From NCBI GenBank assembly GCA_964019335.1, contig OZ025708.1, forward strand, positions 1-64,000: 64,000 nt of DNA, given 5' to 3'. Position numbers and translations under genes: made by a program. The notes beneath the pieces are model-generated. The model was given only the letters and a program-made list of their open reading frames with translations. It did no database searches and was not told the origin of the DNA. Of the stretch, positions 817-50,270 are shown piece after piece. Position 1 is the first letter of the stretch. Every line of letters begins with the position of its first letter. The DNA comes from Diplonema japonicum. Its lineage: Eukaryota > Protista > Euglenozoa: Diplonemea.

Positions 817-851
817 CAATAAAGTACAGAAACTGTAGCTTTAGAATCGTT

Positions 852-855
<4 letters not shown>
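817..855 (-). other. Retrocopied 39-nt spliced-leader (SL) exon, diplonemid type
   Basis: Minus strand reads AACCAACGATTCTAAAGCTACAGTTTCTGTACTTTATTG (39 nt). It has the euglenozoan SL core CAGTTTCTGTAC and is fused to the 5' UTR of element Z. Confidence 0.92.
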
Positions 856-889
<34 letters not shown>

Positions 890-1708
890 TTGTTCCACTG
901 CCAGTGGGGGAGACAAAAGGTGGAGAGAAGATAAAGAGGTTTGAAACATCAAAAGTCTGTGTTGCACAGGGTGACATAATTGTGCCTGGCAAATCACAGG
1001 GTGAAGCAAGACGGTATTCAGTAAGGGGAGTGTGTGTATACTTCCTTTCAGATATTCCATTGTTCCATTCTTTCTTGGTCAAAATCTTCTCCTTTTGTAT
1101 CGCCTATGGCGCAGTCAGTCTGCCTCTTGCCCCCCTAGTACATTCCTTCGACTGTCCTGCCCATGGCCACCTTTTTTCCTTTCCCCTGGTAGCGCATCCC
1201 CCTCAATAGGAAGGATCGTCTTAAGGATTTCGGGGCGACTCTTGCCTTCGACCGGCCCCGAGCCGTCCCCATGCCGGTTTTTGTTTGTCGTTGGGGCTTG
1301 AATAGTTTTTCTTTCTTTCTGTTGTTTATTTATATAGTTTTTTTTTCTTTTTTTTTTTTCTTTTTAATTTTTATTTTTTTTTTCTTTTCAATACACTGTA
1401 CCGTCTTAAAAGGAGGGAGGGGTTTTTTGGCAGGGAACGAAAATACACTAGGGGAGGGGAGTGAAGGGAGGATTGTTCGAAGCACTATTTATTCCTTTTT
1501 TTCTTTTTTCTTTTTTATTTTTTTTTTTTCTCTCATTCATTTCATTTCTTTTCTTTTTTCCTTACTCAACACCTTACTTGTCTCGCTCATGAGCCTAATG
1601 CTTTTAATAGAGGAAACTCTACCATCCCACGTAAATTAAAATTTATCTTTCAAAAAATGTTTTATAAAAATGTTTTAAAAATGTCTTAATTTATCTCATG
1701 GTCACCCC

Positions 1709-4700
1709 CTACAGCAAGCCAATCTCTTTCAAGAAAGACTCAACTCTAGGGGATTCATCGGTCAGGAGTTCGGTGATGGAGTGCGAACCCAGGTGCCTCG
1801 CCCTCTCCACCTCGGTCCCCCTGCACTCACTCAGAAGATGCGTGAGGTTTTGCACCTCTCCACAGAAAGTGCATTTCACGTCCACCTCCCTCGCCCCTTC
1901 GCGTCTCAGGTATCCCCTGGTGAGCTCGGACTGGCCAGCACGGAGCCTCATTACCTGTATCTCACCCCTTCTCGAGGCCAAGCCTCTCAAAGAGTGAAAT
2001 CGGCCTCCAGTACGTTCTCTGTATGCCTTGTCCTTCCCACTGTCCTCCCACAGTTCCCTCCACTCTTTGTAGATCATTCTCTTAACGTAGGACTTTGTTG
2101 TTCTGTAGTCCGTCAGAGAATAGTGAGTGCCAGCCGTTGTGTGTTCCTTAGCAGCCTTAGAAGCAGCCTCATCCGCTCTCTCGTTGCCCTCGACACCTAC
2201 GTGGGCAGGGATGTACTGTATCGTCACCGACAGATTTCTGTCATTCAGTATCCTGATATGCTGCCAGATGAATACCTCGTCACAGTAGGTTGCTGACTGA
2301 GGGCCTTTTTGTAGGCTCAGGATCAGTGATTGAGAATCAGTGAGCAGTATTAAAGGGATGGTCTTTTTCGTCCGGATGACTTTCTTCGTCGCCACTGCCG
2401 CACCTCTCAAGCCCAGCAGCAATGCTTTGGTTTCCGCTCTGAAAGAGCTGCAGTACTCACCTGCAGACCCCTTTACCACTTCCTCTTTTCCCCTCACCCT
2501 CATCACTGCTGCCGCTCCCCCTCTCCTGTTGTTGGGCGAGGAGCCGTCGGTGTAAATCCTCATGGAATCCTTCGGGAGTGCTGCGATCGTCCTCAGCGCC
2601 ACTTCTAGCCTTTTTTCCTTCGGGTCCGAGCGTCTGCTGTCTTCGATCAGATAGGGTCTCAGATCCAACATCAGGTCACGCCAGGGGGGGATCATGTGGT
2701 CTGCTTTAATGGGCGATGGGCCTACCGGGGTGCATTCCCTCTGCGGAGGGTCCAGGTTCTTTGCATCCCTCCTCATCCTCCCTGCCCAGGTGTCCTCGTC
2801 GAGCTCCTCAGCATGTGCAGCAACACACCCCACTGTGTTGGACTTCCGTATGCATTCCTCGTACAACAGCAGGGTGTCCGTCTTGACTACTGTGTCCAAT
2901 TGTTGTAGTCCTGCCTCTACCACTGCTATATGTTTGGAGATCTTCCCAGGGAGCCCTGTGATAAATCTCGCCGCCGTTTCATGTAGTTCGTTCAGGTCGT
3001 CAAAAAGGTCCTTCCGCAGCGACTTGCCGTAGACCCCCAGGCCGTATCTTGTCAGTGGGAACACGTACGTTAGGTAGATCGCTCTGAGCATGTCCCTTCT
3101 CAACCCACCCTTCTTGCTGGACAGTCTGTACAAGTATCCCAAGCGCCTACGCGTCTTGTTTTTGACTTCACCCACGTGAGCCTCGAAGGACGCGTTAGCG
3201 TCTAGCGTGACCCCCAGGTACTTCGCCTTGTCTACCTGTTTCAATCCTGTCCCGTCTCCGAAAGATACCTTCAGTTTCCTCGAGACTCCGTTGCAAAGGA
3301 TGTTCGATTTTTCGGGTGCCAGCTGCATCGACCACCTCTCAGCCCACTGTTCCACCAAGTCAACAATCAGTTGTGCCTTTTTCTCGACCTCCTTGTCCTT
3401 CTTGCCTTCGACCACGACCATGATGTCATCTGCATACGTGCAAGCACGAATGCCTCGTTCTTCTAGCACTCTGGTCAGGTCATCCACATAGATGGTAAAG
3501 AGTAGGGGTGCCAGGACAGTTCCTTGAGGGACTCCCCCCTTAAACTCCCTGGAGACCCCATGCGTGCCTTCCACCTCCACCGCCACTTTTCTCTTGCTGA
3601 GGTAGCTCTTTACCCATCTTGTGTATTCTTCGGGATATCCGTTATTCTCCATCTTTGCTATGAGTCCCTCATGCCACACCGTGTCGAAGGCCCCCTTAAG
3701 GTCCAGAAAGAGCAGACCTCCCCTTTTCCCCGTGTTGTTGTATTTGAAACCCTGTAGAGTTTTCGCAGCGAAGAGTATGTTCTCTGTGGTTGATCGGCCT
3801 CTCATGAAGCCGGATTGTGTCCAGTGTGGTGGGGTTACCTTCCTGGTCTCTTGAAGGTAGACCATCCTGCTTCTCACCACCCTCTCCATGGCTTTCGCGA
3901 TGTTGCTCGTCAGGGATATGGGCCTGTAGGAGTCGGCTCTGCTCGGGTCTTTGTTGGGTTTCCTGAGTGGTCTGATTGTTGTTCTCTTCCACTCCGACGG
4001 GACCTTCCCTTCCTTCCAAGAGAGATTGAAGAGATGTTTCAGAACTTCCACTCCTTTTGGCCCCATTTTTTTGAGATATTCGTTGTAGATGCCGTCGGGT
4101 CCCGGGGCTTTTCGTTTCTTTAGCTTCGCGATCTCGCCCAGCACCTCACTCGTCGTGACTGCTTCTGCTTGTTCTTGCTGGGTCTCTCTCTTCACCTCGT
4201 TTTTTAGGGATTCCAGAGCTTCTCTAGAGGATTGTCCTATTTTCGGTGTACATTTTGCTGCGTAGTGTTCGCACAAGGCTGTTGCTTTCGCCTTGTTACT
4301 TGCGTATCTTGTACCGTTCTCCCTGAGAACCGAGACTCCGGGTTTCGTTGCACTCCCGTCAAGCTGCCTTATGAAAGCGAAAGTGTCTTTGGACGTTTTC
4401 TTCCTTCCCAGTTCATCCAGGAAATCTTCGTCCCTCTTTTGTTTAGAGGCTTGTATTAACTCCCTTGTCTCTTTCTGGAGTAACCTCACCTCCGCTAAGG
4501 CAACCGGATCGTCCTCGCCCTTGCTTACGTACTCCCTTAGTTTGGTGTTCCTTTCCTTTACCTTGCTGTCTATCTCAGGAGTCCACCACGCCTTAGCAGG
4601 TTTCGGCCCTTTTCTAGGTATGCTCTCCCTAGAAGCTGCCATGAGCAGGTCGATGAGTCCCTTACTCACCACCTCCACGTCCTTGCTCTTTAGAAGGCAT

Positions 4701-6010
4701 GATGTCCTCTCTTCTACGATAGTCCTGAATTTGCCCCAGTCAGCTTTTTCCCATACCAGCTTCTGGGGCGGTTTTTTCCTTCCTTCCTTTTGTTGCTGTC
4801 CCACTTCCCATTCGTAGAACATGGGAAAGTGGTCGGAACCTATTGAGTCCAGTACCCTCCACGAGCCTGGGTCATACCCCGCGTCCGTTATCATTATGTC
4901 GGTCGTGGTGAAGGTTCCTCTCGTTGAGAAGTGTGTGGGGCACTTTGGTCTGTTGAGTGGCAGCATGTTCGTCCTGACCATCCATTTCTCCAGTTCACCG
5001 CCCTTCAGGTCACTGTTCTTAGCGGTACTGTCCCACATGTCAGAGTGCGCGTTGAAATCACCCGATATCAGCACATCCTGACCAGAAGGGAGATTGGAGA
5101 CTGCCAAGTCGCCTTTGACTTTCGTGGACGATGGGGGGCGGTAGATGTTGACCAAGAGCAGTTTTCTTGTTTCGGTGAGTTGTACGGATACGTCCAGTCT
5201 TTCCGTCCTGTCATCACGTTCTCCTATGAACGTCTGCTCAGCATCCAGGTCTCTCCTGACCGCCGTCACCAGACCACCTCCCCTCTTCACCTCCCCGTCC
5301 TCGTTTAGCACCACCCTGTCTCTCCTGAACAGGTTGAAGCCCGGTAGTTCGATTTCATCCTCGGTTCTTAGCCATGATTCCTGTATCATAACCACATCAA
5401 GCTCGAGTTCTTCTATACTTTTCTCGAGCTCCACCATTTTCCCTCTCACCGAGTGTGCATTCACCGACAACACTCTCAGCTTCGGGTTGCGTGGCTGATC
5501 AGTCTTTATTTTCATGTTAGGACCGGGGTTACTCTCGACGTCTCCGCAGCTTAGGATATCCATTCCATGTGGTCCTGTTCCTCCTCGTCGTCTGTTCGTG
5601 CTTTTGCTTGACTTACCGTATTGGTCACCCCCACACCCCGGGTTTCGGATGAAGGGTCGTACTACTTGGGGGGGGCCGGCCATAACTGACCTATCATCGC
5701 CGCCACTAACGCCTTGTCTCGCTTGGACACCCCCGTTCGGGGCCGGCCAGGATTTAGCCGCGTGTTGTAGCCAAGTAGTACCACGTCCTCGTCTTCGCTT
5801 TCTTCTTCCTTGCTTTCCGCCGTTGTTTTGTTCTCTTCGTTTATTGTTCACTCTTTTGTTTGTGGGGTTGCCTTTTCTTTTTCCCCTTTCTTGGGCTTTG
5901 GCTTTTTTTTTTTTTAAAATCTTTTTTTTGCCCTTTTCTTTTAAGTTCTTTTGGTTGATGCGACACTTTCTTTTTTTTTTAATCTTTTTATTTAGTTTTC
6001 TGACCTTCAC
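1709..6010 (-). CDS. Family A ORF2: 2A-like peptide, APE endonuclease, reverse transcriptase, RNase H, C-terminal Cys/His motif
   Basis: Motifs DVESNPGP, SGDFNAH, GSDHFP, LDLKGAFD, GVPQG, YADD, YLGV, YTDGS, TDSQS, GNERAD, CTFC..HLLSEC. The Lys-rich N-terminus is A-rich spacer; the real start is probably near 5563-5630. Confidence 0.93.
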   Translation of the reverse strand: MKVRKLNKKIKKKRKCRINQKNLKEKGKKKILKKKKAKAQERGKRKGNPTNKRVNNKRREQNNGGKQGRRKRRRGRGTTWLQHAAKSWPAPNGGVQARQGVSGGDDRSVMAGPPQVVRPFIRNPGCGGDQYGKSSKSTNRRRGGTGPHGMDILSCGDVESNPGPNMKIKTDQPRNPKLRVLSVNAHSVRGKMVELEKSIEELELDVVMIQESWLRTEDEIELPGFNLFRRDRVVLNEDGEVKRGGGLVTAVRRDLDAEQTFIGERDDRTERLDVSVQLTETRKLLLVNIYRPPSSTKVKGDLAVSNLPSGQDVLISGDFNAHSDMWDSTAKNSDLKGGELEKWMVRTNMLPLNRPKCPTHFSTRGTFTTTDIMITDAGYDPGSWRVLDSIGSDHFPMFYEWEVGQQQKEGRKKPPQKLVWEKADWGKFRTIVEERTSCLLKSKDVEVVSKGLIDLLMAASRESIPRKGPKPAKAWWTPEIDSKVKERNTKLREYVSKGEDDPVALAEVRLLQKETRELIQASKQKRDEDFLDELGRKKTSKDTFAFIRQLDGSATKPGVSVLRENGTRYASNKAKATALCEHYAAKCTPKIGQSSREALESLKNEVKRETQQEQAEAVTTSEVLGEIAKLKKRKAPGPDGIYNEYLKKMGPKGVEVLKHLFNLSWKEGKVPSEWKRTTIRPLRKPNKDPSRADSYRPISLTSNIAKAMERVVRSRMVYLQETRKVTPPHWTQSGFMRGRSTTENILFAAKTLQGFKYNNTGKRGGLLFLDLKGAFDTVWHEGLIAKMENNGYPEEYTRWVKSYLSKRKVAVEVEGTHGVSREFKGGVPQGTVLAPLLFTIYVDDLTRVLEERGIRACTYADDIMVVVEGKKDKEVEKKAQLIVDLVEQWAERWSMQLAPEKSNILCNGVSRKLKVSFGDGTGLKQVDKAKYLGVTLDANASFEAHVGEVKNKTRRRLGYLYRLSSKKGGLRRDMLRAIYLTYVFPLTRYGLGVYGKSLRKDLFDDLNELHETAARFITGLPGKISKHIAVVEAGLQQLDTVVKTDTLLLYEECIRKSNTVGCVAAHAEELDEDTWAGRMRRDAKNLDPPQRECTPVGPSPIKADHMIPPWRDLMLDLRPYLIEDSRRSDPKEKRLEVALRTIAALPKDSMRIYTDGSSPNNRRGGAAAVMRVRGKEEVVKGSAGEYCSSFRAETKALLLGLRGAAVATKKVIRTKKTIPLILLTDSQSLILSLQKGPQSATYCDEVFIWQHIRILNDRNLSVTIQYIPAHVGVEGNERADEAASKAAKEHTTAGTHYSLTDYRTTKSYVKRMIYKEWRELWEDSGKDKAYRERTGGRFHSLRGLASRRGEIQVMRLRAGQSELTRGYLRREGAREVDVKCTFCGEVQNLTHLLSECRGTEVERARHLGSHSITELLTDESPRVESFLKEIGLL
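5614..5781 (-). promoter_or_regulatory. Conserved structured RNA in the ORF1-ORF2 spacer (IRES-like candidate)
   Basis: Homologous to 49410-49581. Compensatory closing stem GTACTACTTGG/CCAAGTAGTAC versus GTACGACTTGG/CCAAGTCGTAC. Confidence 0.65.
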
Positions 6011-6027
6011 TAAAATCAGGTCTTTCG

Positions 6028-7122
6028 TTAATGAGAGACTTTCTTCTTGGCGTTCAGGGGGGCTGACGGGTTTGAATGAGAGGGAGTAGTGGCCATGGTG
6101 GCTTGGCGCGAGGTCGCGTTTCCCACCTTTCTCACAGGTGTGGAGGGGAGTTCAGTTTGGGTGGGTGAGTAGTCGATGCCGGACTGAGATTCGTCCGGTC
6201 TCTCGTGGCAGTGCGGTGGTGGCTCGGGGCTTGACTCTTCTTCTTCCTCCATCCTATTGCCTCCTGTTGTCAGGAGGAGGAGGATTTTATTATACTGGCT
6301 CGCACCAGTCTCCGTCAGCCTCCTCTCCATGGCCACCAGCCGCTCCGTCTGCACTGTCGCCATTCTCTCGATGGCTTGTGCCAGGTTACCAACCTGACCT
6401 TCGACCGCTTCCACCTTACCCTGTACCTTCCCCATCTCCTCTTCCTGGGTCTCCATTCTTGACTCCAGGTGCCTCAACATCATTTCCTCTTCCTCCCCCT
6501 TCTCTTCCTTCTCCGCTAGTTTCCTCTCCATCACCTCCAGTCTCTCCATCAGCGCCTTCAGCTGCTCCCCGCTTTCTCCGTCTGTCGCCTTTTTTTCTTC
6601 CTTATCCTTCTTTCTCTTTTCCTTTTTCTCTTCCTCTTTCTGTTTTATGTCCCTGTCCCTGACACCAGCCGCACACCACAGTTCCCACCAGACACTGTTT
6701 CCGAAGAACCTACGGAACTCTATCGCCGTAGCCTTCCTCTTTGTCTTGCCCCCCGGCAAGGACCTCCTGTAGTCCAGCAGACCCCCCGTTTGCACAAGGA
6801 GGTGCACAGTCTGCTCGATCTCACCCAGCTTCACTTCCAACTTCACAGAGGGGGGAGGGGCTTCAGCTCTGATGGCACCAATGGTGCCGTCAAACCTTAA
6901 AAGCTTCCCCCATCTGATCTCGCTGAGAATTGAAGCTAGCTGCGACCAGCTACAGGATGGGGACACAGCTACGTCTACATAGAGGCATTTAGTTCTTGTC
7001 GTTGGGGTCGGTGGCGTGGGGTCAAGTGTCAGGGTTATCGGGGGCTGGTCTTCGCCGGCGCCTTTCGCGCCGCCCAGTGGGGACCTCGTGGAGGTGCCAG
7101 CTTCCTTCTGCTTATCAGACAT
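6028..7122 (-). CDS. Family A ORF1 (coiled-coil, 364 aa)
   Basis: ATG-initiated ORF upstream of ORF2 with an E/K-rich heptad region and the motif EFRRFFGNSVWWELW. Confidence 0.8.
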   Translation of the reverse strand: MSDKQKEAGTSTRSPLGGAKGAGEDQPPITLTLDPTPPTPTTRTKCLYVDVAVSPSCSWSQLASILSEIRWGKLLRFDGTIGAIRAEAPPPSVKLEVKLGEIEQTVHLLVQTGGLLDYRRSLPGGKTKRKATAIEFRRFFGNSVWWELWCAAGVRDRDIKQKEEEKKEKRKKDKEEKKATDGESGEQLKALMERLEVMERKLAEKEEKGEEEEMMLRHLESRMETQEEEMGKVQGKVEAVEGQVGNLAQAIERMATVQTERLVAMERRLTETGASQYNKILLLLTTGGNRMEEEEESSPEPPPHCHERPDESQSGIDYSPTQTELPSTPVRKVGNATSRQATMATTPSHSNPSAPLNAKKKVSH

Positions 7123-12896: not shown

Positions 12897-12968
12897 CACC
12901 CACCGTGGGGATCGAACCCACGACCATTGGATTAAAGGTCCAACGCTCTACCGCTGAGCTAGGTGGGC
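12897..12968 (-). tRNA. tRNA-Lys(TTT)-like gene with atypical C33
   Basis: 72-nt cloverleaf: acceptor GCCCACC/GGTGGGT, D-arm GCTC..GAGC, anticodon stem TTGGA/TCCAA with loop CCTTTAA, T-loop GTTCGATC. Confidence 0.85.
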
Positions 12969-18320: not shown

Positions 18321-19663
18321 ATAATAATAATAAATGTACCACTGTCGTGCGAAGCTAAAGGCTGGGGGGGAGGGATAGGTGCAGGAGGCCTGAAGGGCCT
18401 CCTGCAAGTGAAAGGGGGAACGAGAGGGGTTGACAAATTTTTTGTAAAAGTTTAAAGAAAACCCTCCCACAACTATCCATACGTACCGAGGCGGGAGGTG
18501 GGCAGGCCCGGGGGCTCCCAGCGTTCGCAACTGTGCCCACCTTCAACGTCCCTCGGCATCTCACCAGCCCGCATCGCACAACAGCACCCTTTGGCCGAAC
18601 CTCCGGGATTTCAAGGGGTGGGGTACCTCGTCAGTGCTCGTAGGCACACCGGCACGGAGGCATCCCCTTCAGCCGGTTTTGTTGGGCTGTGGAGCCTTTG
18701 GAAAATAAAATTGTAAGGAAAACATAACCAGAGAGGAAGAAAGAAGTTGGGGTGCACGACAGGGCAAAAAAAAGGGAAGACATGGGGGATGAGAGTACTA
18801 TTACTAAAAAAGTTTAAATCTACTTCTACTTCTTGCCGGCCCGGCACAGCACGCCTCGCACCCAGCAGCACACGCCACGCAGACAGACCAGCGCACCTCC
18901 ACCGCCACCAGTTCTCTTCCAGTGTCCCCGTGCACCCCACCGTCGATCCGTTTATCTGTACCCAGTTCGGCTACCGATCTGTCTGGCCTTCCAGTTGCGA
19001 CAGGGCGGTCATTGCCTGAAGGGCGCCGGGATCAACACTGTGGCCTCCACTCCGCGCGAGACCGGTCTCAGCCTCACGTCTCTCGGATGGGGTACGCTGG
19101 AACACTGGGCGACGCCGCCGCCCGCATCACACCACAACACAGCGGAACCAGCACAAACAAACCGTACGCCACTCACCAGCGACACCAGCCACAACTCACC
19201 GCTCCTGTTCATCCCACCGTTGTCCGAGTACCTGTACCCAGTTAGCCTGTGTCCTGACTGGCCTTTCAGTTGGGGTAGGACTGACAACGCTACAAGGGCG
19301 CCGGGAACAACCTGTGGCCTCCACTGTGCGCGAGATCGGTCTCAGCCTCTCGACGCTGGTGGAATGAACAGGAACGGTGGGTGTCGCCGCCGCACACAAC
19401 CACGCACACGCCGCGCGATGGGAGAGAATGCCTTTTGCTCAGACCGAGTCTGAGTGGTCTTACACCCCCGCTACCGGTGCCCCGATAGCGGCTTGTGCCA
19501 AACAGACCGTCTTCGTTCCGGCACACTCCCCGACACGCCTTCGCGCTTTCGCACCACAGCCCTCCCTGGCCTGCGGTCCCAGGGGCCACCACGAGGAGGA
19601 CAGCGCAGGATACTTCACACCATGTTGTTGTTCTTTTTTTTATGTGTACCCCAACCCCCTTGA
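18321..19663 (-). mobile_element. Non-autonomous unit F: G-like 3' UTR plus a non-coding body with a twin structured repeat
   Basis: (TTA)n tail, UTR homologous to family G, no RT coding. Duplicated at 50271-51625. Confidence 0.7.
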
Positions 19664-48400: not shown

Positions 48401-49407
48401 AGCCTGGCGGCCTCCTTGACGGCTTCAGTGAACTGCTTGTTTAGCCTGACCGGGTCTCCTGTTCTCTGCAGGTGCCTCAGGGTGTACTCCAGATGATTCC
48501 TGTACCCCTCCCAGTCAGCTTTTTTGAAGCTGAATTTCTTAATGGTTGGTCCGGTTTCGTATTTCGTTCTTATCCGGATGGACATGGGTATGTGGTCAGA
48601 CCCCCATGAATCGAGGGTTGTCCAGGATCTAGAGTCCATGTCTGGCCCGCTTATCACCAGGTCCGGTGATGATAAGGAACCTCTTGTGTTCAATAGTGTC
48701 GGTGTGGCTTTGTCATTCCAGGGTCGCATCCCTTTCTCGATCATCCACTTTGCGACTTTGTCACCTATGAGGTCCTCTTTCTTTCTTCTCCCGTCCCACA
48801 GAGGGTGGTGGGCGTTGAAATCCCCCATGATTAAGGTTCTGTCCCCTGTCGGGAGTGTGTTCGGGTTGAAGTAGGTGTCGATGCTCGGTCTGTCATCGCT
48901 CGGATCTGACGGCGATGTTGGTGGAAGGTAGATGTTCACCAGGAGGATCTCCTTTTGACCTGGCGGGTATATTTTGACGTCCAGTCTTTCCGTCACGTCA
49001 TTTTTCTTCTCCTTCCTTTCGACACCGCTAGCGTTGATGCCTTCTTTCACGAGAGTCAGTAAGCCGCCCCCTTTTATGGGGAAATTCCTCCTTCTCGGTC
49101 GCGTCCTGTCTCTTCGGAAAGCTCTGTACCCTTCGAACCAGCCGTGGATCGCATCGTCTGATGTTAGGTGTGTCTCTTGGAGACACAGGATGTCCGGCGC
49201 TGTTTCTTCGATAGCCTTCTCGATTTCGGCCTTCCTAGCTCTGAGGGACCTCACGTTCAGCGAGACTATCTTCAGCCATCCGTCTTTCGCGGCTGGCCCC
49301 GGGTTCTGCTCGACGTCACCGCACGCCAAGATGTCCATATCATGTGGTCCGCAACCTTTGCGCATCTTTCTCGGTGTGGTCGAGGGTCGTTTCAGCATGT
49401 ATGTCAC
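45421..49407 (-). pseudogene. Family E ORF2 (2A-APE-RT-RNase H) with one in-frame TAG
   Basis: DVEQNPGP, YADD, FTDGS. WG*VVLRAL here versus WGCKKVVMRAL in E' suggests a 6-nt deletion created the stop at 46843-46845. Confidence 0.87.
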
Positions 49408-49409
49408 TC

Positions 49410-49581
49410 TGCCTTTGTGGTCACCCCTACCTTCAGGTCTTCGAAGATAGGGTTGTACGACTTGGGGGGGGCCGGCCCTAACAGACCTTACGTCGCCACC
49501 ACTAACGCCTTGTCCCGTTTGGACACCCCTATACGTGCGGGGCCGGCCAGGATTTAGCCGCGAGTTGTAGCCAAGTCGTAC
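49410..49581 (-). promoter_or_regulatory. Conserved structured RNA in the ORF1-ORF2 spacer (IRES-like candidate)
   Basis: Homolog of 5614-5781 with compensatory changes. Confidence 0.65.
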
Positions 49582-49644
49582 GAGCTTCCTTCGCGCAGAG
49601 AGATGACATTGCTGTGACCCGTTGTCGTCGTCGTCGTCGTCGTC

Positions 49645-49830
49645 GTGTATTATTTTTTTTTTATTTTTATTTTTTTTTTTTGTTGTTTTTTTTTTTTTTC
49701 TCTTGTTCTTTTATTTTCTTTATGTTTTTTTTTTTTTTTTTGTTATTTTTTTTTTGTTTTTGTTTTTTTTTTTATGGTTTTTTTTTTTTTTTTTTTTTTA
49801 ATTTTTTTATTATTTTTTTTTTTTGTAGAC
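49645..49830. repeat. Long interrupted poly(T) tract (A-rich spacer of element E)
   Basis: Seen directly. Confidence 0.85.
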
Positions 49831-50270
49831 GAATTGGGGGGTTGGGGGCTTAATAGGGAAACACTTTCTTTTTTCTTTTTTTTTTCTTTCTTATCTATTA
49901 TGGTAAAATGGAAAAAACTTATCACCTTTTTCACCTCTTCTTTGATTTTCCGCCTTTCCCGGACTTCTTCGCTGTGTCCGGTGTGCTCGGTGTCGGCGAT
50001 GTCGAGGTGGAGGAGGAGGTTGTCCCCTTCGAACCCTTCGAGCCCCCTGGTGCGTAGGGCGCTGCCTTCAGCGACACCTTTGCAGAGGCCCATTCCTGGC
50101 CCCTGCGCCTTCCTGGTTTTGCTCCGGCGGGAGTGTCTTCCAACTCCGTTTCCGAGCCCGAGGATGGCTGGTGTTGCTGTGGGGTGTTCGGTTCCAGCTC
50201 CGGTCCGATGAATTTGGACGGTGTCGGGGCTGTGGGTGTGGCGGTGGTTTGGGCCTTTTTGGCCTTTTGA

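What the first reader, a model, noticed from the sequence alone, without database searches (positions are those of the whole stretch)
5614..5781. Covarying ~170-nt RNA structure before ORF2 in families A and E: IRES-like candidate
Seen: two families with diverged proteins share this block (also 49410-49581) after a long A-rich spacer. It has an 11-bp closing stem with a compensatory change, an inner GGCCGGCC pairing and small hairpins. A 3' hairpin (CCCTTCATCC/GGGTGTGGGG versus CCCTATCTTC/GAAGGTAGGG) has an 8-nt loop ending CCG or CCT, which could pair with CGG or AGG at the same distance downstream. A 4-nt loop indel between the families argues that the 5' part is not conserved as protein. 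The 3' end (GGT GAC CAx) is in the ORF2 frame in both, leading to GPHxMDILxCGDVExNPGP. Inference: an intergenic IRES, possibly non-AUG like dicistrovirus IGR IRESs, with 2A trimming the leader. A ribozyme or processing signal is an alternative.
Basis: partly seen in the sequence, partly recalled or inferred. Interest (0 to 1): 0.82.

Follow-up and report, generated by a model that had tools for sequence, protein, structure and literature searches.

The report
Conserved pseudoknotted RNA before retrotransposon ORF2
A 170-base folded RNA with a pseudoknot sits just before the reverse-transcriptase gene in several unrelated jumping-gene families of one marine protist, and may be how ribosomes start that gene without an ordinary start codon.

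Summary
Window 5614-5781 and 49410-49581 (minus strand) are two copies of one structured RNA, internal to bicistronic LINEs. Block identity between families A and E is 86-87%; the flanks are at most 61%.

Covariance-model searches of this genome found it in at least nine sequence types:
- LINEs with ORF1, A-rich spacer, block and 2A
- LINEs with the block in frame between an OTU protease and the endonuclease
- a GIY-YIG, Penelope-like element
- a family carrying only the 3' module, twice

It has two domains. Domain 1 is a multi-helix junction closed by a 10-11 bp stem, with 10 of 11 pairs compensated.

No Rfam family matches.

Function is inferred. ORF2 has no frameshift, readthrough or conserved-AUG route in families A, F and I, so a ribosome-recruiting, frame-setting element is my best reading (about 0.4). 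It fails the dicistrovirus IGR membership tests. Processing, exonuclease-blocking and protein-binding roles remain open.

The parts
6028..7122 (-). ORF1 of the family A LINE (364 aa, coiled-coil-like); TAA stop at 6030-6028
   Evidence: Copies stay homologous from the block up through the spacer into ORF1.
5782..6027 (-). A-rich spacer: 246 nt, 56% A, no ATG in any frame
   Evidence: The ORF2 frame opens only after the TAG at 6013-6011, downstream of the ORF1 stop.
5659..5781 (-). Domain 1 of the block (family A): closing stem Pa 5781-5771 with 5669-5659, and hairpins Px 5760-5744, Pc 5742-5730, Pd 5729-5715, Pe 5691-5678
   Evidence: Pa has 10 of 11 pairs compensated across families.
5616..5656 (-). 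Domain 2 (family A), an H-type pseudoknot: S1 5656-5647 with 5638-5629; loop 5646-5642; S2 CCG 5641-5639 with CGG 5618-5616; linker GUGACCAAUA 5628-5619
5576..5614 (-). Leader codons between the pseudoknot and the conserved 2A tract, in the ORF2 frame
   Evidence: 31 codons from the codon after CGG-U to the 2A glycine.
5519..5575 (-). 2A / StopGo coding tract GPHGMDILSCGDVESNPG|P
   Evidence: The motif D(V/I)ExNPGP is as described in PMC3708506 (passages read).
1709..5518 (-). ORF2: AP endonuclease, reverse transcriptase, RNase H; TAG stop at 1711-1709
   Evidence: Exo_endo_phos 6.5e-11, RVT_1 7.4e-41, RNase_H 2e-13.
49455..49581 (-). Domain 1 of the family E copy, with 4 extra bases in the Pc loop
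49412..49452 (-). Domain 2 of the family E copy: S1 49452-49443 with 49434-49425; S2 CCU 49437-49435 with AGG 49414-49412
49294..49350 (-). 2A coding tract of the family E copy (GPHDMDILACGDVEQNPG|P)
49582..49900 (-). A-rich spacer of the family E copy (about 320 nt in a full copy, 60% A, A runs up to 24, one ATG)
   Evidence: The upper bound in the window is approximate.

Best explanation
The block is a cis-acting RNA of the retroelement transcript. I propose it engages a host machine, most likely the ribosome, just 5' of the enzyme ORF. In this reading domain 1 (a five-helix junction) is the docking part. Domain 2 (an H-type pseudoknot with a 3-bp, codon-anticodon-sized second stem) fixes the position and reading frame at which translation of ORF2 begins, without a conserved AUG. 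In families A, E, F and I the first 29-38 residues would be a throw-away leader that gives the 2A peptide the upstream tract it needs, and 2A then releases ORF2p with a defined N-terminus. In H and J the same point lies 12 residues before the endonuclease domain.

Shown: the structure, its covariation, its spread across element classes, its fixed register with the ORF, and the lack of a conventional route to ORF2 in A, F and I.

Inferred: ribosome binding, non-AUG initiation and the role of the A-rich spacer.
For: 1. Position. In 7 of 8 sequence types (A, E, F, I, H, J, K; not G) an ORF runs on from the pseudoknot in the same register, NGG-Y then codons.

2. No other route.
- In A the ORF2 frame opens after a TAG that lies downstream of the ORF1 stop, so frameshift or readthrough from ORF1 is impossible.
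- In F the ORF2 frame has stops inside the spacer.
- ORF1 to ORF2 frame offsets differ: -1 in A and E, +1 in F and I.
- I has 0 in-frame ATGs in the 140 open codons before the 2A proline. The only ATG shared by A, E and F is 14 codons before that proline. PMC3708506 states that the bare motif is inactive without a suitable upstream tract (passage).

3. Coding downstream. Distances from the pseudoknot to the 2A proline are 93, 114, 114 and 87 nt, all multiples of 3. The stretch is therefore read as codons from the pseudoknot or above.

4. No spliced-leader route. The 16-nt SL 3' core was found 0 times in any of the 73 loci then held, including up to 1.5 kb (less where the contig ends) upstream of all 28 A/E/F copies. 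The genome holds 214 SL copies.

5. Host partner implied. The block is far more conserved than the reverse transcriptase. It is also shared by APE LINEs and a GIY-YIG element with only a weak RVT_1 match.

6. Precedent as an idea only. PMC3894237 (passages) asks whether IGR-type IRESs exist in non-LTR elements and reports none.
Against: - H and J carry the block in frame inside one ORF reachable by UGA readthrough from ORF1, so no internal entry is needed there.
- In G two UGA stops follow 6 codons after the pseudoknot, although a 108-aa and a 211-aa ORF further down are in the same frame.
- The triplet directly 3' of the pseudoknot is UAA in A. The ORF register is offset by one base from the dicistrovirus rule, and no fourth pair explains the offset.
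- No stretch of 8 or more bases complementary to 18S rRNA recurs across families or exceeds shuffles.
- No near-cognate start codon is conserved after the pseudoknot.
- Folding energies are unremarkable.
- All evidence comes from one genome.
Confidence: 0.4

Rival explanations
1. RNA-processing site. The block is a new self-cleaving ribozyme, or the target of a host endonuclease. It would cut the transcript at its 5' edge, leaving ORF1 RNA with a genome-encoded A-rich tail and a separate ORF2 RNA. The cut might be coupled to translation, as reported for HDV-like and hammerhead ribozymes.
For: - Long A-rich tracts lie directly upstream in A, E and F (56-71% A, A runs up to 24).
- Both element classes that carry the block are known ribozyme hosts. 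Passages and reference list of PMC13725137 cite Ruminski 2011 and Cervera and de la Pena 2014.
- The same paper reports ribozymes in a short intergenic UTR 7 nt before an ORF2 start, and cleavage-dependent translation.
- The unpaired nucleotides of the block are highly conserved.
Against: - No Rfam ribozyme family matches at E up to 10 (family A) or up to 5 (five other types).
- The topology does not fit the HDV fold: the 3' tail pairs with the apical loop of the last hairpin (manual reading).
- 0 of 28 A/E/F copies and 0 of 4 extra J copies start at the block's 5' edge. One F copy starts inside Px and one J copy inside domain 1.
- 12 of 12 family E ORF1 3' ends (99-100% identity) are followed by the block, so there are no ORF1-only copies.
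- In H and J a cut would sever one ORF.
Confidence: 0.15
2. Exoribonuclease-resistant RNA. The hairpin-plus-tail pseudoknot would form a ring that stalls 5'-to-3' decay and leave a stable RNA that begins at the block and carries the enzyme ORF.
For: - The topology is an apical loop pairing with sequence 3' of the hairpin. An invariant A lies just 5' of the stem, and the linker GUGA(A/C)C is conserved.
- The module works as a unit, since family I keeps domain 2 alone, twice.
- A purely structural function needs no element-specific partner, which fits sharing between LINEs and a Penelope-like element.
- The comparison with plant-virus and flavivirus xrRNAs is recalled, not tested.
Against: - There is no pile-up of copies beginning at the block.
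- Nothing in Rfam matches.
- It would not by itself explain the fixed register with the ORF or how the uncapped product is translated.
Confidence: 0.1
3. RNP-assembly or protein-binding site for the element's own proteins, like the 5' protein-binding RNA of R2 that overlaps the start of its ORF.
For: - It lies at the start of the enzyme ORF and overlaps coding sequence in H and J.
- These elements also carry a separate shared 3'-UTR pseudoknot (window 1225-1297).
- The R2 precedent is recalled, not read.
Against: - The RNA is 86-87% identical between A and E while their ORF2 DNA is 30-61% identical.
- E and F share it with unrelated ORF1s.
- It also occurs in an element with a different endonuclease and a very distant reverse transcriptase.
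- An element-specific partner should co-diverge.
Confidence: 0.12
4. A roadblock inside translated sequence: a pause site, or a stimulator of frameshifting or readthrough.
For: - The frame stays open through the block in all six LINE families.
- H and J certainly allow translation through it.
- H-type pseudoknots are classic recoding stimulators (recalled).
- Other LINE families here use an in-frame UGA plus 2A (notes s1-864454 and s1-860112; UGA seen in J).
Against: - No in-frame stop lies just 5' of domain 2 in the ORF frame in A, E, F, H or J, and no slippery heptamer sits 5-9 nt upstream.
- In A and F nothing can be translating in that frame from upstream.
Confidence: 0.1

Closest known systems
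Dicistrovirus intergenic-region (IGR) IRES
   Same: It is a compact RNA of about 170-190 nt between two ORFs with two folding units, the 3' one a pseudoknot next to the first codons. No AUG is required. PMC3894237 (passages) raised the possibility for non-LTR elements.
   Different: - Only one pseudoknot was found here, against three.
- The second stem is 3 bp.
- The adjacent triplet is UAA in family A, and the ORF is one base out of the IGR register.
- There is no Rfam match.
- In H and J it lies inside an ORF.
HDV-like ribozymes at the 5' end of LINEs (R2, RTE, L1Tc) and the Pr77/2A layout of L1Tc
   Same: A structured RNA sits directly upstream of a retrotransposon enzyme ORF that lacks a clear start. 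L1Tc, from the sister group of diplonemids, also starts its ORF with a 2A. Sources: PMC3708506 passages; PMC1874656 search listing only; the ribozyme papers appear only as references in PMC13725137.
   Different: Here the RNA is internal, 1.4-1.8 kb from the spliced-leader head. It is about twice as long and does not fit the nested double-pseudoknot topology. No cleavage footprint is seen in the copies.
HCV-type (type IV) IRES
   Same: It combines a multi-helix junction with a pseudoknot that places the start region on the ribosome (recalled).
   Different: It has no AUG at a fixed distance, no Rfam match, and no loop complementary to 18S rRNA above chance.
SART1 termination-reinitiation signal and calicivirus TURBS
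   Same: An RNA structure near the ORF1/ORF2 junction of a LINE controls ORF2 translation (PMC3708506 passage).
   Different: Here the ORF1 stop is 112-320 nt upstream. No stop-start overlap exists, and no 18S-complementary motif was found.
Plant-virus and flavivirus exoribonuclease-resistant RNAs
   Same: A hairpin whose apical loop pairs with the 3' flank (recalled).
   Different: Sequence motifs were not compared, resistance was not tested, and domain 1 has no counterpart.

Membership tests
Dicistrovirus IGR IRES | Match to the Rfam IGR IRES models | tested here: not met
   No IRES family was reported on the block at E up to 10 (family A) or up to 5 (types G, H, J, I, K).
Dicistrovirus IGR IRES | Three pseudoknots (PKI-III) | tested here: inconclusive
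   One pseudoknot is supported. A hand search for further loop-loop pairings found none that hold across families. No pseudoknot-aware predictor was available.
Dicistrovirus IGR IRES | First decoded codon directly 3' of the codon-like strand of PKI | tested here: not met
   That triplet is UAA in A and CAG or CAA elsewhere. It is out of the ORF2 frame by one base in the seven types with an ORF downstream.
Dicistrovirus IGR IRES | Factor-independent 80S binding and non-AUG initiation | not testable with these tools
   Needs toeprinting or reconstitution.
HDV-like ribozyme | Nested double pseudoknot with the 3' end pairing to a strand just after P1 | tested here: not met
   The 3' tail pairs with the apical loop of the last hairpin. 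There is no Rfam hit. The topology was judged by hand.
HDV-like ribozyme | Self-cleavage at the 5' edge | not testable with these tools
   Indirect only: 0 of 32 examined copies begin at the 5' edge.
Hammerhead, twister, pistol, hatchet and hairpin ribozymes | Conserved catalytic cores as modelled in Rfam | tested here: not met
   No hit on the block.
Readthrough-stimulating pseudoknot (MuLV type) | In-frame stop codon about 8 nt 5' of the pseudoknot | tested here: not met
   There is no stop in the ORF2 frame before domain 2 in A, E, F, H or J. In I a UGA lies 8 nt before the first domain 2, but not in the ORF1 or ORF2 frame.
-1 frameshift signal | Slippery heptamer 5-9 nt 5' of the pseudoknot | tested here: not met
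   None was seen in the printed sequences.
2A / StopGo peptide (the downstream partner) | D(V/I)ExNPGP with a conserved upstream tract, at the N-terminus of ORF2p | tested here: met
   The motif GPHxMDILxCGDVExNPGP is present in A, E and F, and GPHGKHLLSCGDIEANPGP in I. Activity was not tested.
Exoribonuclease-resistant RNA | Blocks Xrn1 through a ring around the 5' end | not testable with these tools
   Only the loop-to-3'-flank pairing is shared.

The most novel reading that the evidence does not exclude
A cellular-genome counterpart of the viral 'structure-only' IRESs. A 170-nt two-domain RNA would load ribosomes internally and set the reading frame with a 3-bp codon-anticodon-like pseudoknot, so that retrotransposon ORF2 starts at no AUG and a 2A peptide then trims the leader. 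The module would be mobile between LINEs and Penelope-like elements. It would also be a way round the spliced-leader cap requirement of euglenozoan translation.
Probability: 0.2. Interest if true: 0.9.

Novelty: new variant of a known kind. Interest (0 to 1): 0.68.

Why it matters
How the second ORF of LINEs is translated is a long-standing open question (PMC3708506 and PMC3894237, passages read). Here one genome offers several natural variants of a single covariation-supported RNA placed exactly at that step:
- the full block
- the 3' module alone
- the block with a 2A downstream
- the block with an OTU protease upstream
- the block in another element class

This gives ready-made mutants for reporter, toeprint and end-mapping experiments. 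If it is an entry site, it would be the first structured, frame-setting IRES described in a retrotransposon, and in an organism where every mRNA normally needs a trans-spliced cap. If it is a ribozyme or a nuclease block, it would be a new class. Either way it is an RNA family absent from Rfam.

Tried and rejected
- Rfam, whole window at gathering score: only a tRNA at 12897-12968.
- Rfam at E up to 10 on 5450-6100: only a chance snoRNA hit. At E up to 5 on five loci of other types there was nothing on the block.
- Single-sequence folding: not more stable than shuffles.
- A local hairpin ACC/GG as an alternative to the pseudoknot: one of its central pairs is unpaired in 7 of 15 rows (helix 10). 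The pseudoknot is paired in 36 of 36 cells.
- Protein-level conservation: of 17 A-versus-E codon differences I counted by eye in the 3' part, about 6 are synonymous. The peptide is unconserved where stems covary.
- Frameshift or readthrough from ORF1: excluded in A and F.
- Spliced-leader addition near the block: 0 SL cores in the 73 loci then held.
- Copies starting at the block, and ORF1-only copies: none.
- 18S rRNA complementarity of 8 nt or more: 1-8 hits per type against 3.6-4.4 in shuffles (H2, at 8, the only type well above that mean), none shared across families.
- Relatives elsewhere: one metagenome pattern scan gave 7 stretches. The model scored only one of them, at 8.7 bits (E 0.42), so none is a relative. 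Other diplonemid genomes could not be reached, so absence elsewhere is not shown.
- MAFFT of whole domain 1 across families misaligned the 3' strands. Px, Pc, Pd and Pe therefore rest on my hand definition and not on the counting tool.
- Loci L083 and L084 added nothing: a 3'-cut K-like relic and a 180-nt ORF1 fragment.
- Literature: searches found no description of this RNA or of diplonemid LINE expression. For PMC10161547 I saw the search listing only, and its supplements (closed) may list these elements.
Full report
**What is at the coordinates.**
The family A copy reads as follows:
- ORF1, 7122-6028
- a 246-nt spacer, 56% A, with no ATG
- the block, 5781-5614
- a short leader
- the 2A tract GPHGMDILSCGDVESNPG|P, 5575-5519
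- ORF2 down to 1709, with AP-endonuclease, RVT_1 and RNase H domains

The block is internal to the element. Copies of each family remain homologous from the block up through the spacer into ORF1, and they stop at scattered 5' truncation points.

**Is it more than chance?**
A 201-nt query found 28 places in the 62.5-Mb genome. Five belong to family A, sixteen to E and seven to a third family F, giving 13 distinct sequences. Between A and E the first two 60-nt windows of the block are 86-87% identical. Every other 60-nt window over 1.4 kb on each side is 9-61% identical, ORF2 included. E and F share ORF2 (63-91%) but not ORF1. The block is therefore an island held at the nucleotide level, or exchanged between families.

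**More distant copies.**
A covariance model of A/E/F (R1) run on the genome gave 81 matches at E up to 1. Only 150 of about 4,700 candidates were scored. A model of the 3' module (R2) gave 87 matches at E up to 0.1, with 150 of about 23,000 candidates scored. They sort as follows:

| Type | Copies | Context |
|---|---|---|
| A | 5 | ORF1, A-rich spacer, block, leader, 2A, ORF2 |
| E | 16 | same layout as A |
| F | 7 | same layout as A, with an ORF1 unrelated to E's |
| I | 15 first and 15 second modules | only the 3' module, twice, 147 nt apart, then leader and 2A |
| H | 3 | ORF1-UGA, then in one frame WRGG, an OTU protease (residues 35-134), the whole block (about 179-232) and the endonuclease (from 245) |
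| J | 17 | same layout as H |
| G | 7 | a different class of element (see below) |
| K | 1 | unclear context |
| K-like relic | 1 | 3'-truncated |

In type G the block lies in non-coding sequence about 285 nt after a 415-nt repeat unit that occurs twice in one copy (L071). It is followed by a 211-aa ORF, a GIY-YIG ORF and a 1,061-aa ORF with a weak RVT_1 match. This is a Penelope-like layout.

**The structure.**
Domain 1 (123 nt in A) is a junction closed by stem Pa. The Pa strands have entirely different sequences in A/E/F, in G and in H/J, yet pair over 10-11 bp. On the model-fitted alignment, 10 of 11 pairs change on both sides and 91.8% of cells are paired. For the whole structure, 91.1% of cells are paired, against 74.6% in shuffles and 33-49% when the partner is slid. 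That alignment leans towards the model.

Inside the junction, by my own hand definition, are four hairpins:
- Px, which covaries in F, G, H2, J and K
- Pc
- Pd, with an invariant GUCC/GGAC core
- Pe, which covaries in G, H and J

Domain 2 is a 9-10 bp hairpin, S1. Seven of its 10 pairs are compensatory. For the whole domain-2 structure (13 pairs, pseudoknot included), 92.3% of cells are paired against 21-60% when slid (12 sequences). The last three loop bases, CCN, pair with NGG ten bases downstream, across the conserved linker GUGA(A/C)CNNNN. All 36 cells are paired. The variable pair is U-A in nine rows, G-C in family A and C-G in K. These are two independent double changes. The support is moderate rather than overwhelming, because it rests on one position.

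G-U pairs place the RNA on the element's sense strand.

No Rfam family matches any type. Folding energy alone is unremarkable.

**Coding or RNA?**
In the ORF2 frame the 3' two-thirds of the block is open in A, E and F. The 4-nt loop insertion of E shifts the frame of the 5' part. The encoded residues are conserved only where the RNA fixes them. Examples are Pro from CCC and CCN, and Gly-Asp/Glu from GGUGAM. They vary freely where stems covary. The constraint is therefore on the RNA, while the frame is kept open.

**How ORF2 could be reached.**
- In A the ORF1 stop (6030-6028) precedes the last stop of the ORF2 frame (TAG, 6013-6011). No frameshift or readthrough can link them.
- In F the ORF2 frame has stops in the spacer.
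- The ORF1-to-ORF2 frame offset is -1 in A and E, and +1 in F and I.
- Family I has no in-frame ATG in the 140 open codons before the 2A proline. The only ATG shared by A, E and F lies 14 codons before it. The 2A literature says the bare motif needs an upstream tract (PMC3708506, passage).
- The distance from the pseudoknot to the 2A proline is 93, 114, 114 and 87 nt in A, E, F and I. All are multiples of three, giving leaders of 31, 38, 38 and 29 residues.
- In J the codon after the pseudoknot is 12 residues before the endonuclease match.
- The spliced leader (window 856-817, minus strand; 214 copies in the genome) heads full-length elements 1.4-1.8 kb upstream of the block. It was never found within the stored flanks of any block copy (0 hits in 73 loci).

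Together these points make an internal, structure-guided start the simplest account for A, F and I.

**What speaks against it.**
- H and J do not need it, because the block sits inside an ORF that UGA readthrough can reach.
- In G two UGA codons follow six codons after the pseudoknot. A 108-aa and a 211-aa ORF further on share that frame.
- The dicistrovirus rule fails. The adjacent triplet is UAA in A, and the ORF register is one base further on in the seven types with an ORF downstream (all but G), with no extra pair to explain it.
- No conserved near-cognate start and no 18S-complementary loop was found.

**Rivals.**
- A processing site or new ribozyme fits the A-rich tracts, which would become an encoded tail, and fits the known ribozyme habit of LINEs and Penelope-like elements (PMC13725137, passages). 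No copy starts at the block's edge (0 of 32), no ORF1-only copies exist (12 of 12), and no ribozyme model matches.
- An exonuclease-blocking fold shares the loop-to-flank topology. It is untestable here.
- A binding site for the element's own proteins is hard to square with sharing across unrelated ORF1s and very different reverse transcriptases.
- Pausing or recoding lacks a stop or slippery site in place.

**Novelty and limits.**
Searches of the paper library found no description of this RNA. One review (PMC3894237, passages) only asks whether IGR-type IRESs might exist in non-LTR elements. All evidence comes from one genome, which another agent's note calls Diplonema japonicum; I did not check that. 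The single metagenome scan found no relatives. Supplements were closed.

**Verdict.**
The RNA is real, structured, modular and new to Rfam. It is best read as a device for starting ORF2 translation (confidence about 0.4). It is not a member of the dicistrovirus IGR family. Its function remains to be shown at the bench.

Noticed in passing
L081 (G000:C3:788200-790400), nt 121-2201: In a full-length family E copy the ORF2 frame has no stop from nt 121, just before the ORF1 ATG at 143, to the end of the locus. It thus overlaps all 461 ORF1 codons in the -1 frame. Observed stops are 0 against 6.8 in codon shuffles (0 of 2,000 shuffles as low). Family J ORF1 is also depleted (6 against 14), so junction dinucleotide bias may explain part of it. 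A and I show no depletion.
   Followed up: partly
window 1700-1711 (minus strand): The family A ORF2 stop, TAG, is followed at once by GGGGTGACC. This is the same 9-mer as the 3' end of S1 plus the linker of the pseudoknot module. It could well be chance, at about 0.5 expected per window.
   Followed up: no
window 817-856 (minus strand): A complete spliced-leader sequence lies directly after the poly(A) of the family A copy and heads the next element. The genome holds 214 exact copies of its 23-nt 3' part.
   Followed up: partly
These short words also occur in the Px loop and after the pseudoknot of the block. No homology was shown.
   Followed up: partly
window 18915-19390: The twice-repeated structured motif of 'unit F' contains GGGATCAACAC, like the strand after Pa in family H. 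Neither covariance model hits it.
   Followed up: no
L070/L072 (G000:C96:145000-158500, minus strand): This is a seven-copy element with a 415-nt repeat unit that occurs twice upstream of the block in one copy (L071). The block is followed by a polypyrimidine tract with AG, then a 211-aa ORF, a GIY-YIG ORF (421 aa) and a 1,061-aa ORF with a weak RVT_1 match. It is probably a Penelope-like element with an N-terminal or separate GIY-YIG.
   Followed up: partly
L082 (G000:C17:633300-635300), nt 1483-1740: In family I an ATG 8 nt before the first pseudoknot opens an 85-codon ORF in another frame. It runs through both modules and ends inside the 2A-coding tract.
   Followed up: no
L060 132-324: A U2 snRNA gene (138.8 bits) lies about 2.2 kb upstream of a family H block.
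   Followed up: no
window 12897-12968 (minus strand): A tRNA gene (67.6 bits) is the only Rfam hit in the window at gathering score.
   Followed up: no
L089 (G000:C119), 3' end of 18S rRNA: The last hairpin of 18S rRNA reads ...GTAGGTGAACCTGC..., which contains the same GGTGAAC as the pseudoknot linker of types G, H and J. This is same sense, not complementary. A 7-mer match in 2 kb is not significant.
   Followed up: no
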